From: Diadema antillarum
Taxonomy: Eukaryota
Reading direction: 5' to 3'
Assembly (NCBI RefSeq): GCF_040938485.1
Contig: NW_027271382.1
Coordinates: 558,001-622,000, forward strand
DNA: 64,000 bases
Part shown: piece by piece, positions 5,574-27,876 of the stretch
Numbering within the stretch: position 1 is the first letter of the stretch
Layout of the letters: each line of letters opens with the position of its first letter
The notes under the pieces: model-generated
Databases searched by the model: none
What the model saw: only the letters and a program-made list of their open reading frames with translations
Told to the model about the DNA's origin: nothing
Position numbers and translations under genes: made by a program

Positions 5574-6150
5574 ATGGTTTCTAGTGAAGGCAAGCAAGAC
5601 CTAAGCGGTGCTGAAGCCGTTTCCGGAGCGCCCAATTCGCAACATCCAACCTCGTATTCTAACCCCGGCCATAGCCAACAATGGGCCACCCCTGCCTCAA
5701 GCTCGTACTCGCAGCAGGTACAGGCATACCAAGTTCCAACCCCGACGTTTCCCCAGGTTATTGTGCCACCGCAGCAGCAAACTAATGCGCCTACTTACGA
5801 CAACGACCAGGTCTCCGTGGTCCCTCACGGCCCCTCGCCACCTAATGAGCGCTCCTTCGTGTTGACCGCCATCCTCCTGTATTCCCCTCTGGGAATCTTT
5901 GGTTGTCATCACTTCTACCTGAATAACCTGTTCCTCGGCTTCGTCTACTCCAGTACGATGGGGATCTTCGGCATCGGTTGGGTTGTCGATTGGTTCCGAA
6001 TATGGTTCCTAGTCAGAGACTGTAACGAAGTCATACGGGAGGCGAGGGAGAGGGGCCACTGGCTCGTCAGCCACAAGTATCCCGGGATACTCCGAAAGAT
6101 GTCTGTTATCGATGCCTACCTCTTATGGTTGCCTCCTTTTGGCCTGTTTG
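5574..6150 (+). CDS. Triple-TM2-domain membrane protein, gene A, exon 1 (join 5574..6150,6859..7451; 389 aa)
   Basis: ATG at 5574; P/Q-rich N-terminus; TM2 motif RSFVLTAILLYSPLGIFGCHHFYL...GWVVDWFRI; phase-1 donor G|GTAAGT at 6150/6151. Confidence 0.9.
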
Positions 6151-6858
6151 GTAAGTTGACAGTAACAGCAGGGAAAAGTTAGGTATAAACCCATTACTGT
6201 TGAGAAGTTGTTGAGAGTCACTTCATTGTTTCTTCACAGAAAACCTACATAAATTGGCAGTGGGAACCTTAATCCCCATTGGAAAGGATAAAGAAAGGAT
6301 GGGGAGGGAAATTAGATAGAAAACAATTCAGTCACTTGGGAAAACTTCCCCGTAAATTCAGTCATGGTGATGATTTATCATTTAGAAATTCAGCAGTTTT
6401 ATTTTGTTCCTTACTTATCCAACTGATAATTAGGAAATTTGCTGTTGTCGTCTTCTTTTTGTAACAAACGAGATTGGCAGTGATTTGAAGATTGAATTTA
6501 CTTCTCCATTCTTTCAGCAGACGTATTTACTGTAATTTTTGTTCGATATCTTATCAAAAAATGTGTTACGTGCAAAAAAAGGAAGAAAATGTCTTTTCAG
6601 TCAGCTTTAACATTTTTTTTTTCTTTGTGCAGCTCTCTTCTGAAATATACACAAAATGAAACCCTTGACACTCTCATAGGCTTGACAAAAGAAACGATAA
6701 TGTTGCAGTTATTAAAAGATAATGTACGATTGTTCTCTTTTTCTCGAACAATGAAACTGCCCTTGGATAAACGAAACCCAGCTGCTGAATACGATGTAAG
6801 TTTAATTCATTGAGTGATTCTTTTTTTTTTCTTTCTTCCAACAATATTTTGCGTTCAG

Positions 6859-7451
6859 GCATCCATCACATGTACCTCGGCCGGGTCCGCTATGGCTTGT
6901 TTTACACCGCAACGCTAGGTCTGAATATATTTAGCTGGTTCATGGATCTGTTCCGCATTCCCTTCTTGGTTTGGAAGGCGAACAAGGAGGTAAAACTCCT
7001 CAAACAGGGCGGGTCCCTCGATCCTCCTCGGTACTCCCTCCTCGATGCCTACCTCCTTCACATGCCGCTTGGACTTTTTGGTCTCCACCACTTTTACCTC
7101 CGGAACTACAGCAGGGGCATTCTGTATCTCTTCACCCTGGGCGTCTTCGGGCTGGGCTGGCTGGCCGACCTCTTCCAGATGCCCCTGCTCGTAAATGAAG
7201 CCAACAAGAACCTGGACTTACAGGAGCGGGTTGGGTACGTCATCAACGCGCAGGGGGTTATGCCCGCAACGACAAGCACTGTTATCGTGGTAACAAACAA
7301 TACCCCTAATGACCAGCCGAATAGGTACAACGTCGAACCACCGCCACCGTATGCTCCCCAAGCCCCAGAGATACAGACCGTGCCACCGCCTCCTCCAGCT
7401 CCAGCGCAACCATATGCAACTACGAATTATCCGCCTCCAGCGGTAGCCTAG
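6859..7451 (+). CDS. Triple-TM2-domain membrane protein, gene A, exon 2
   Basis: TTCAG| acceptor at 6858 gives in-frame G|IHHMYLGR; third TM2 domain LGLFGLHHFYLRN...GWLADLFQMP; PPPY tail; TAG at 7449-7451. Confidence 0.9.
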
Positions 7452-26066: not shown

Positions 26067-26376
26067 ATGAAGGACAAGTCTAAGAGCGTGGCGCGGGTCC
26101 TCTGCTACCCGATCCTGGGTCTATTCGGTCTGCACCACTTCTACTTGAGGAGGCGGTTCTTCGGCAGGGTGTACCTCTGCACCTTCGGGCTCTTCTTCCT
26201 GGGCTGGCTGATCGACTGGTTCCGGATAGGCAAGCTAGTGAAGCAGTGCAACGAGCACATCTCTGAAGCACGTGGTAGAGGTCACTGGATACACAGCAAG
26301 AAGTATCCGGGGTACCTGTCTCCCAAGCAGTTCAGTGATGCGCTCATTCTCTGGCTTCCTCCGTCTGGCCTTTTTG
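26067..26376 (+). CDS. Triple-TM2-domain membrane protein, gene E, exon 1 (join 26067..26376,27200..27876; 328 aa)
   Basis: MKDKSKSVARVLCYPILGLFGLHHFYLRR...DALILWLPPSGLFG|; phase-1 donor G|GTAATT. The start codon is inferred and an upstream exon is not excluded. Confidence 0.85.
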
Positions 26377-27199
26377 GTAATTACTTCATGCCGCCCTTTC
26401 TTTCTCGATTTCATAGCTATGAAGTGATGGTTACAGTATACTAGTAGGAGACTTCTGCATCGTTTACTGTTATTGGTTATCATTCGTCTCATGGGCAATG
26501 ACGTGCTAAGTACGTATGCTCAATATGAAAAGGAGATGAATGTAATTGATGTGGATAATTATATTGACTTATGTTAACGTGTAAAGCAATGACGTTACGA
26601 TAGCATTTTCTATAGTACTACCTCATACACACACTCACACACACACACACACAAATCTGATTATCATTTTGTTTGTGTTTTCTTAACTTAAAAAAAGAAA
26701 CATATTTCCATAATGAAAAAATGAAAAACGACTACTCAAATGATATTATGTAATAATGAATGCTTAGATATTTTGACAAAGAATTGGTGAAAATAATGTG
26801 GAATTAATGTAAAAAGCTCTTATAAACTATAATTTGGCAATTTCACGAATATTGGTTGGTTTTCTGTTAAGAGATGTCGATTTCTTCCCATGTTGTGCGG
26901 CAGCTAATGACACGAAAGAGTATCATTGGGACCATGGGATTTATCTCCCCTCCCTCTATGTCGACATCTGGAAAGTTTTACTTCCCATGAAGTGTCTAAG
27001 GGTAGGTCTCAAGCAAACCAAACAAGGAAAGGATTAGACCAAGATCAAACTAATTAGCTTACAGAAGAAGGCAGTAAACTCGAAGTATCAATTAATGTAT
27101 GTATTCTTAATTTCTGTAGACGTTGTTACCTTTATAAACGGTTATGACATAGAGGGTTTATTCTCTCTCCATATCACTCTTTCTGCTTATTTTCTACAG

Positions 27200-27876
27200 G
27201 CCTCCACCATTTTTACCTTGGAAGGACTCGCTATGGCATTTTCCATGCGTGTACTCTGGGATTCTTCGGTGTCGGGTGGATAGTCGATTTATTCCGTCTG
27301 TCGTACATGGTTGAAAAGGCGAACACAGACGTAAAACTCATGAAGAAGGGGGTCCGAGTCGGCGAAGACCCTTACGTCACTTCGGACGCGTATCTTCTTG
27401 CCATCCCCCTGGGATTGTTCGGACTTCACCACTTCTACCTGTACAACAAGTCACGCGGAATTCTCTTCCTCTGCACGCTGGGTGTGTTTGGAGTCGGTTG
27501 GCTGACGGACCTCGTTCAAATGACTCTTATCGTTAAGGAGGCCAACAAGAAGCGGCAGATGCGGGAGCGACTCCAACACGCCCTGGCGAACGGAGTGGAA
27601 CCAAGTCCAAACGCCATCGTCCTGAACGTGGTAGCATCCGGGAATCCTGGTTTCCAAGGAGATGGTGATGTTGGGCCCAGGCCAGTTGAGCATCCGGGGG
27701 GACTCACCGTCAACCTATCAGAGGCCCCTCCACCTTACAGGGCAGATGCGGCAGAGGGTCACTCCACTATTGCGATTGGAGGGGAAACAGCCGGTCCTTC
27801 GTCCTCAGCATTTCACGAAGGGGCCGCAGGGGCCGCAGAGGTGGTGGAAGGTATCCCACCGAAGCAAGACCACTAA
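27200..27876 (+). CDS. Triple-TM2-domain membrane protein, gene E, exon 2
   Basis: TACAG| acceptor at 27199; G|LHHFYLGRTRYG in frame with ORF 27307-27876; GLHHFYLYN; EAPPPY; TAA. Confidence 0.9.

What the first reader, a model, noticed from the sequence alone, without database searches (positions are those of the whole stretch)
5574..27876. Five-gene tandem array encoding an unusual triple-TM2 membrane protein with PPxY tails
Seen: each spliced gene encodes three consecutive TM2-like units ([K/R]S or D-A..hydrophobic..G.xHHxYL..G..Y..TLG..G.GW..D...P..V..AN), a conserved linker (CN..EA..RG....S..YPG) and, in A, B, C and E, a hydrophobic strand then PPxY (PPPY, PPPY, PPAY, PPPY). Known: animal TM2D1-3/Almondex have a signal peptide and one TM2 domain with a DRF motif. 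The GLHHxYLGR...GWL..AN signature, from memory, instead matches the N-terminal TM2 domain of DNAJC22/Wurst, which has a C-terminal J domain and acts in endocytosis. PPxY binds WW domains of Nedd4-family ligases. Inference: this is an expanded family in which a Wurst-type TM2 unit was triplicated and the J domain is absent, with a PY tail instead. It could be a ~6-TM ubiquitin-ligase adaptor or endolysosomal trafficking protein, apparently uncharacterised.
Basis: partly seen in the sequence, partly recalled or inferred. Interest (0 to 1): 0.85.

Follow-up and report, generated by a model that had tools for sequence, protein, structure and literature searches.

The report
Sea-urchin triple-TM2 membrane gene array
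Five neighbouring sea-urchin genes encode six-helix membrane proteins made of three TM2 repeats with a PPxY tail; they belong to a widespread but unstudied family that probably links membranes to the ubiquitin machinery.

Summary
The window is Diadema antillarum DNA with five same-strand, two-exon genes at 5574-27876. Each encodes three Pfam TM2 units. Genes A and B equal RefSeq "uncharacterized protein" models exactly. A, B, C and E end in a PPxY tail.

Two caveats apply to this haplotype. Gene D has a 1-bp frameshift. Gene E has lost its start codon and 32 codons through a 293-bp deletion. Both genes are intact on the allelic contig, which the scan had flagged separately (s1-217783).

- The units are DNAJC22-type: HH in place of DRF, and 40-58% identical to the DNAJC22 unit.
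- DNAJC22 itself has only one TM2 unit, no shared intron, and exists separately in sea urchins.
- The array is an echinoid-specific three-unit offshoot of an old family that usually has four units. That family occurs in echinoderms, hemichordates, a tunicate, molluscs, annelids, a brachiopod, ctenophores, a placozoan and protists.
- PPxY is strongly enriched in the family's C-terminal tails: 80 of 140 proteins against about 15 expected.
- Protist members carry a RING or UBX domain at the same position.

Best reading: polytopic adaptors or clients of Nedd4-family ubiquitin ligases. This is inferred, not shown. I found no literature and no solved structure.

The parts
5574..7451 (+). Gene A: exons 5574-6150 and 6859-7451, 389 aa. 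TM2 units at about 5850-6020, 6096-6977 (split by the intron) and 7029-7199. PPPY at 7341-7352.
   Evidence: (identical to XP_071498751.1)
11217..13093 (+). Gene B: exons 11217-11793 and 12501-13093, 389 aa. PPPY at 12983-12994. Recent paralogue of A.
   Evidence: identical to XP_071498752.1; Ka/Ks 0.27
17261..19281 (+). Gene C: exons 17261-17843 and 18644-19281, 406 aa. PPAY at 19144-19155. Groups with Lytechinus pictus 432-aa gene.
   Evidence: (P0171, allelic 406-aa model)
24111..25387 (+). Gene D: exons 24111-24576 and 24913-25387. Three units, no PPxY. The reading frame is broken in this haplotype.
   Evidence: The D. setosum orthologue P0014 (329 aa) is intact and ends the same way, without PPxY.
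24932..24934 (+). Frameshift site in gene D: a run of GGG here against GGGG on the allelic contig L001. Either a real null allele or an assembly error.
26016..27876 (+). Gene E: exons (26038)-26376 and 27200-27876. The first in-frame ATG is at 26067. PPPY at 27727-27738. The annotated start is missing in this haplotype.
   Evidence: (P0156, 369-aa allelic model)
26037..26038 (+). Junction of a 293-bp deletion relative to the allelic contig. It removes the start codon and first 32 codons of gene E. RefSeq bridged it with a fused D+E model of 608 aa.
   Evidence: (P0155)

Best explanation
The region is a tandem array of five paralogous genes in the sea urchin Diadema antillarum. Each encodes a polytopic membrane protein with three TM2 hairpins, giving six transmembrane helices. 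The N-terminus is hydrophilic and has no signal peptide. Four of the five proteins have a C-terminal tail with a PPxY motif. They form an echinoid-specific three-unit branch of an old, unnamed eukaryotic family whose usual form is four TM2 units plus one to three C-terminal PPxY motifs. Proposed mechanism (inferred): both termini and the basic inter-unit linkers face the cytosol. The PPxY tail binds WW domains of Nedd4-family HECT ligases. The TM2 bundle therefore acts as a membrane-anchored adaptor, or a client, that brings ubiquitination to endomembrane or plasma-membrane cargo, in the manner of Ndfip1/2 or TMEM127. Gene identity, architecture, conservation and the motif statistics are shown. 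Topology, WW binding and adaptor activity are inferred.
For: Architecture: Pfam TM2 hits in every exon, three units per protein, and an AF2 model with pLDDT above 90 over residues 100-320 showing six membrane helices plus a small sheet. Real genes under constraint: exact RefSeq matches; A versus B Ka/Ks 0.27; orthologues in D. setosum and Lytechinus, with tandem pairing kept in L. pictus. Family: 115 representative clusters at E<1e-30, spanning many animal phyla and protists. A phase-1 intron at the same Gly codon occurs in the four-unit Diadema paralogue. PPxY: 80 of 140 C-terminal tails carry it against 14.9 +/- 3.2 in shuffled tails (maximum 24). N-terminal heads show no enrichment, 5 against 5.2. 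Ubiquitin link by domain fusion: a RING domain lies C-terminal to the TM2 units in five homologues, including Capsaspora and Fabomonas. A UBX domain lies there in four, including Soliformovum. Topology: linkers average 5.4 K+R against 1.5 in the hairpin turns. RING and UBX domains act in the cytosol (established knowledge), which places the tail there. Precedent: multi-pass PY-motif adaptors of Nedd4 ligases, NDFIP and TMEM127 (PMC12720080, PMC7342019).
Against: There is no experimental datum for any member. Diadema proteins carry one C-terminal PPxY; A and B have a second PPRY in a linker. NDFIP2 needs several PY motifs to activate WWP2 (abstract of PMC12720080). Gene D and the four-unit paralogue P0019 lack PPxY altogether, and 60 of 140 family tails have none, so the TM2 core must have a PPxY-independent function. 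PPxY also binds WW proteins other than Nedd4 ligases. Topology rests on charge bias only. No expression data were available here.
Confidence: 0.5

Rival explanations
1. The proteins are clients rather than adaptors. The TM2 bundle has its own activity, for example a channel, a transporter, a lipid or metal handler using the conserved His-His pairs, or a scaffold. PPxY then only sets its turnover by Nedd4-dependent endocytosis and lysosomal sorting, as in ENaC.
For: The strictly conserved residues lie in the membrane part: G, HH, Y, T-x-G, G-x-G-W, D and R. Many members lack PPxY, including D and P0019, yet keep the core.
Against: Three different ubiquitin-system modules (PPxY, RING, UBX) recur at the same C-terminal position. 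That fits recruitment of machinery better than a simple degron. No fold match to any channel or transporter was found.
Confidence: 0.25
2. One reading: J-less derivatives of DNAJC22/Wurst that act in clathrin-mediated endocytosis through the same TM2-based membrane function.
For: The units are 40-58% identical to the DNAJC22 TM2 unit and share GLHHFYLGR...GW..D..R.P..V..AN. They score 63-81 bits against the family unit HMMs. DNAJC22 is among the best Swiss-Prot fold hits.
Against: DNAJC22 has one TM2 unit only. The global fold match has TM about 0.2. There is no shared intron. A separate DNAJC22 gene exists in Lytechinus. The multi-unit family is found in protists. The unit tree does not resolve any derivation.
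Confidence: 0.1
3. PPxY recruits WW proteins other than HECT ligases, such as YAP/Yorkie, Kibra, WWOX or MAGI, so the proteins are signalling scaffolds.
For: PPxY is a general class-I WW ligand (established knowledge). TM2D proteins touch Notch signalling (PMC8714088).
Against: The RING and UBX fusions point specifically to ubiquitin and p97.
Confidence: 0.1
4. The array is largely decaying duplicated DNA without function.
For: D is frameshifted and E is 5'-truncated in this haplotype. D sits on a long branch.
Against: Both genes are intact on the other haplotype. A versus B Ka/Ks is 0.27. Orthologues are conserved between Diadema species and Lytechinus.
Confidence: 0.03

Closest known systems
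Unnamed multi-TM2/PPxY family (e.g. Capitella R7U582, oyster K1QYI1 and XP_052714642, Ptychodera XP_070569576; annotated 'TM2 domain-containing' or 'uncharacterized')
   Same: Same TM2 unit subtype and C-terminal PPxY tail. E-values run from 1e-40 to 1e-105. The four-unit Diadema paralogue has the same phase-1 intron.
   Different: Most members have four units. Some bivalve proteins have six, and a brachiopod and a crinoid model also show six. The echinoid branch has three units, with a longer first linker that pairs with an N-terminal strand in the model.
DNAJC22 / Wurst
   Same: Its N-terminal TM2 unit is of the same subtype, with HH in place of DRF and the R.P..V..AN ending. It is 40-58% identical to the window's units.
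   Different: DNAJC22 has one TM2 unit followed by unrelated helices and a C-terminal J domain, and no PPxY. It has no intron in the unit.
TM2D1-3 (Almondex, Amaretto, Biscotti)
   Same: They share the Pfam TM2 hairpin. Single units superpose at 1-2.3 A rmsd.
   Different: TM2D proteins have a signal sequence, an extracellular domain, one TM2 unit, a DRF motif in an intracellular loop and extracellular termini (PMC8714088). Here there is no signal peptide, there are three units, HH replaces DR, and the orientation is probably opposite. Identity is 27-35%.
Ndfip1/2, TMEM127 and yeast Bsd2 (PY-motif membrane adaptors of Nedd4/Rsp5 ligases)
   Same: They are multi-pass membrane proteins with cytosolic PPxY motifs. 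This is a working analogy only.
   Different: There is no sequence or fold relation. Their PY motifs are often N-terminal and multiple. Binding is untested here.

Membership tests
Pfam TM2 domain (PF05154) | HMM match above the gathering score (27.9 bits) | tested here: met
   39-63 bits for every exon ORF; three units per protein with a unit HMM
Multi-TM2/PPxY family (unnamed) | Three or more tandem TM2 units of the HH subtype, with orthology or paralogy to the four-unit proteins | tested here: met
   tree; shared intron position and phase with the four-unit Diadema gene
Multi-TM2/PPxY family (unnamed) | PPxY in the C-terminal tail | tested here: met
   Present in A, B, C and E, absent from D. 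Family-wide enrichment is 80 of 140 against about 15 expected.
DNAJC22 / Wurst | C-terminal J domain (PF00226, HPD motif) | tested here: not met
   Pfam finds TM2 as the only significant family. No HPD motif in the models. Stop codons follow the tails.
DNAJC22 / Wurst | A single N-terminal TM2 unit followed by non-TM2 helices | tested here: not met
   DNAJC22 sequences show one unit only; the window proteins have three.
TM2D1-3 / Almondex | Signal sequence, a single TM2 unit and a DRF motif (PMC8714088) | tested here: not met
   The N-termini are hydrophilic. There are three units. The motif reads HH[FMI]Y, or YQ/YH in unit 2 of C and D, instead of DRF.
Nedd4-family PY adaptors (functional class) | PPxY motif exposed to the cytosol | tested here: inconclusive
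   The motif is present. Cytosolic exposure is inferred from K+R bias and from the RING and UBX fusions.
Nedd4-family PY adaptors (functional class) | Binds WW domains and activates or redirects the ligase | not testable with these tools
   Needs pull-down and ubiquitination assays.

The most novel reading that the evidence does not exclude
The multi-TM2 bundle is an ancient, pre-metazoan membrane module that works with the ubiquitin system through interchangeable C-terminal handles. These are RING in Capsaspora and Fabomonas, UBX in Amoebozoa, and PPxY (recruiting HECT ligases) in animals. If so, the family would give the first mechanistic handle on what TM2 domains do, including the DNAJC22 unit and perhaps the Alzheimer-linked TM2D3.
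Probability: 0.3. Interest if true: 0.75.

Novelty: new variant of a known kind. Interest (0 to 1): 0.55.

Why it matters
The TM2 domain is conserved from bacteria to humans. It occurs in proteins tied to Notch signalling, Alzheimer risk (TM2D3) and endocytosis (DNAJC22), yet its molecular function is unknown.

This family strings three to seven TM2 units together. It attaches them repeatedly to ubiquitin-system handles: PPxY, RING and UBX. It was not seen here in vertebrates or insects, which may explain why nobody has studied it.

It offers a testable hypothesis for TM2 function. Sea urchins are a tractable system for that test, and Lytechinus shows two adjacent three-unit genes at the locus examined.

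Tried and rejected
1. Cryptic second and third TM2 units in DNAJC22. None were found even with filters off.

2. A global fold match to DNAJC22. TM is about 0.2 with rmsd 18-22 A, so it is not a match.

3. Origin of the three-unit form by loss of an exon flanked by homologous introns. MAFFT suggested this by aligning unit 2 as a chimera of U2 and U3. It is not supported: the one four-unit paralogue examined (Diadema P0019) has only the single intron, at the same site. Which unit was lost stays open.

4. A shared intron between DNAJC22 and the family. There is none.

5. A unit-level phylogeny. It is largely unresolved with 62 columns. DNAJC22 units form their own clade inside a star.

The decisive outgroup test was therefore not run. 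Only the Foldseek identities stand in for it.

7. Solved structures. There is no sequence hit, no Foldseek hit, and the best VIA-align Z is 4.8 on single hairpins.

8. Literature on TM2 plus PPxY or Nedd4, and on PF05154. Nothing relevant was found.

9. One look-up of the Asterias locus failed for lack of a slot.
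Full report
**What is there.** The window is eukaryotic DNA, about 40% G+C, with one N run at 41038-41363 that I did not touch. Between 5574 and 27876 every long + strand ORF pair hits Pfam TM2 (PF05154) at E 8e-10 to 3e-17.

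Joining the pairs at GT..AG sites gives five two-exon genes on the + strand:
- A: 5574-6150 + 6859-7451
- B: 11217-11793 + 12501-13093
- C: 17261-17843 + 18644-19281
- D: 24111-24576 + 24913-25387
- E: (26016)-26376 + 27200-27876

In all five the intron is phase 1. It splits the Gly codon just before the HH.YLG motif of the second TM2 unit.

Models A and B are residue-for-residue identical to RefSeq XP_071498751.1 and XP_071498752.1, both "uncharacterized protein [Diadema antillarum]", on a 1.69-Mb contig. So the organism is a sea urchin, and the gene models are independently annotated. A unit HMM finds exactly three units per protein. tblastn finds no further TM2 remnants in the window. D has none.

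- Gene D is out of frame after YLG of unit 2. The window has GGG at 24932-24934.
- The allelic contig JBFRCO010000418.1 (L001) is 98.2-99.5% identical over 21 kb. It has GGGG at that site and an open frame.
- The same window haplotype has a 293-bp deletion at 26037/26038. It removes the start codon and first 32 codons of gene E. The first in-frame ATG left is at 26067.
- RefSeq bridged both lesions with a fused 608-aa D+E model, XP_071498754.1. That model skips part of unit 2 of D.
- In D. setosum, D is intact (329 aa) and also ends without PPxY. Lack of the motif is therefore a property of D, not of the lesion.
- Whether the two lesions are real null alleles or assembly errors cannot be decided here.
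That piece is probably this allelic contig.

**Are the genes alive?** A and B are a Diadema-specific duplicate. They are 84% identical over 2.8 kb of DNA, with Ks 0.108, Ka 0.029 and Ka/Ks 0.27. Their introns are only 72% identical. The other pairs are saturated at synonymous sites, with Ka about 0.5.

A protein tree gives a fully supported echinoid three-unit clade (100/100). It contains:
- E;
- C, D and the Lytechinus pictus 432-aa gene, with D on a long branch;
- the L. pictus 389-aa gene with A and B.

This clade sits beside the echinoid four-unit genes with weak support (81/86). In L. pictus the two genes lie 5.5 kb apart on the same strand. So the tandem arrangement predates the split between Diadema and Lytechinus, and Diadema carries five genes.

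**The wider family.** A profile of exon 2 found 4300 representative clusters at E<1e-3 and 115 at E<1e-30. Named relatives come from other echinoderms, hemichordates, the tunicate Styela, many molluscs, annelids, Lingula, ctenophores and Trichoplax. Among protists they come from Capsaspora, Fabomonas, Soliformovum and labyrinthulids. All are "uncharacterized" or "TM2 domain-containing". Oyster members are seen in hundreds of transcript-sized assemblies.

The commonest architecture is four units. Some bivalve proteins have six, and a Lingula and a crinoid model also show six. Starfish have an independent three-unit group. The four-unit Diadema paralogue P0019 has the same phase-1 intron in the same Gly codon of its second unit, which ties the three- and four-unit genes together. 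MAFFT aligns the echinoid unit 2 as the first half of U2 joined to the second half of U3. Unit-specific HMMs do not discriminate, so which unit was lost is open.

**Relation to DNAJC22 and TM2D.** Six DNAJC22 proteins retrieved here, including one from Lytechinus, have a single N-terminal TM2 unit. No further unit appears even at E 100.

That one unit is 40-58% identical to the window's units. The units of one window protein are 42-55% identical to each other. It scores 63-81 bits on the family's unit HMMs. It shares the HH pair and the R.P..V..AN ending.

TM2D1-3 units align structurally at 1-2.3 A but at only 27-35% identity. By the literature, TM2D proteins have a signal sequence, one TM2 unit and an intracellular DRF motif (PMC8714088). 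None of these applies here.

The proposed history is not supported, for these reasons:
- The global fold match to DNAJC22 is poor, with TM about 0.2.
- DNAJC22 has no intron in its unit.
- The unit tree is unresolved.
- The multi-unit family is older than animals.

I could not obtain TM2D or prokaryotic sequences, so the outgroup test remains to be done.

**Structure and topology.**
- AlphaFold2 with 68 homologues gives mean pLDDT 78, and above 90 for residues 100-320.
- The model has six membrane helices in three hairpins. A small sheet pairs an N-terminal strand (80-84) with the first linker (162-166). The N-terminal 70 residues and the tail are disordered.
- No solved structure matches by sequence, by Foldseek or by VIA-align, where the best Z is 4.8.
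- Across 136 family members the inter-unit linkers carry 5.4 K+R on average, against 1.5 in the hairpin turns.
- With no signal peptide, the positive-inside rule places the linkers and both termini in the cytosol. The HH.YLG turns then face the lumen or the outside. This is the opposite orientation to that described for TM2D proteins. It is an inference.

**Mechanism.** Two lines of evidence connect the family to ubiquitin.

First, PPxY occurs in 80 of 140 C-terminal tails, against 14.9 +/- 3.2 in composition-preserving shuffles (maximum 24 in 300). It is often present twice or three times. N-terminal heads show no enrichment, 5 against 5.2.

Second, at the same C-terminal position:
- five homologues carry a RING finger (Capsaspora P0029, which also has a PPxY, Fabomonas P0129, P0003, P0056 and P0061);
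- four carry a UBX domain (Soliformovum P0049, P0043, P0102 and P0242).

PPxY is the classical ligand of the WW domains of Nedd4-family HECT ligases. Multi-pass PY-motif proteins such as NDFIP1/2 and TMEM127 act as their adaptors (PMC12720080, PMC7342019).

I therefore rank highest the reading that these proteins are membrane-anchored partners of Nedd4-family ligases, either adaptors or clients. My confidence is about 0.5 overall, and lower for "adaptor" specifically. Against it:
- D and many relatives lack PPxY.
- The Diadema proteins have one tail motif only.
- There are no experiments on any member.

**Novelty.** The genes are annotated but unnamed. I found no paper that describes multi-TM2 proteins, their PPxY tails or the RING and UBX fusions. 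C. elegans ZK858.5, the top Swiss-Prot fold hit, is mentioned only as a TM2 protein in an operon (PMC533873).

This is a new variant of known kinds: the TM2 domain and PY-motif membrane proteins. It is not a new category, and the "unusual triple" form is a local derivative of a four-unit family.

Noticed in passing
window 33985-35711, minus strand: Exons of a GT29 sialyltransferase gene (Pfam Glyco_transf_29, E 4e-16 and 2e-12) lie just downstream of the array. The allelic contig has a 388-aa model there.
   Followed up: partly
window 24111-27876: RefSeq model XP_071498754.1 (608 aa) fuses genes D and E and skips part of unit 2 of D. It looks like an annotation work-around for the frameshift and the 293-bp deletion in this haplotype.
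   Followed up: yes
window 5237-7971 vs 10879-13674: The exons of A and B are far more alike (Ks 0.108) than their introns (72% identity with many gaps). This suggests gene conversion of exons or an old duplication with homogenised coding sequence. Flanking intergenic pieces are also duplicated (5021-5233/9512-9723 and 8520-9289/14066-14834).
   Followed up: partly
L003 (Lytechinus pictus CM073228.1) 10001-20169: Two tandem three-unit TM2 genes (389 and 432 aa) on the same strand, which group with A/B and with C/D. The 432-aa gene has an extra intron in unit 1.
   Followed up: partly
P0004, P0170, P0175-P0180 (bivalves: Mercenaria, Mya; transcript assemblies): A bivalve subgroup has six TM2 units starting at residue 4 and a tail of 200-260 aa, mostly without PPxY. 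It is another architecture of the same family.
   Followed up: no
P0107 (1059 aa), P0238 (Pinctada, 531 aa): There are other fusions of TM2 units, with a class-3 lipase domain and with a galactosyltransferase domain. The second may be a merged gene model.
   Followed up: no
window 41038-41363: An N run of 326 bases (a gap or masked stretch). I left it untouched.
   Followed up: no
window 1100-1700, 2400-2700, 20300-20700, 21250-21400: (CA)n/(TG)n and (TA)n microsatellites lie in the intergenic DNA around the array.
   Followed up: no
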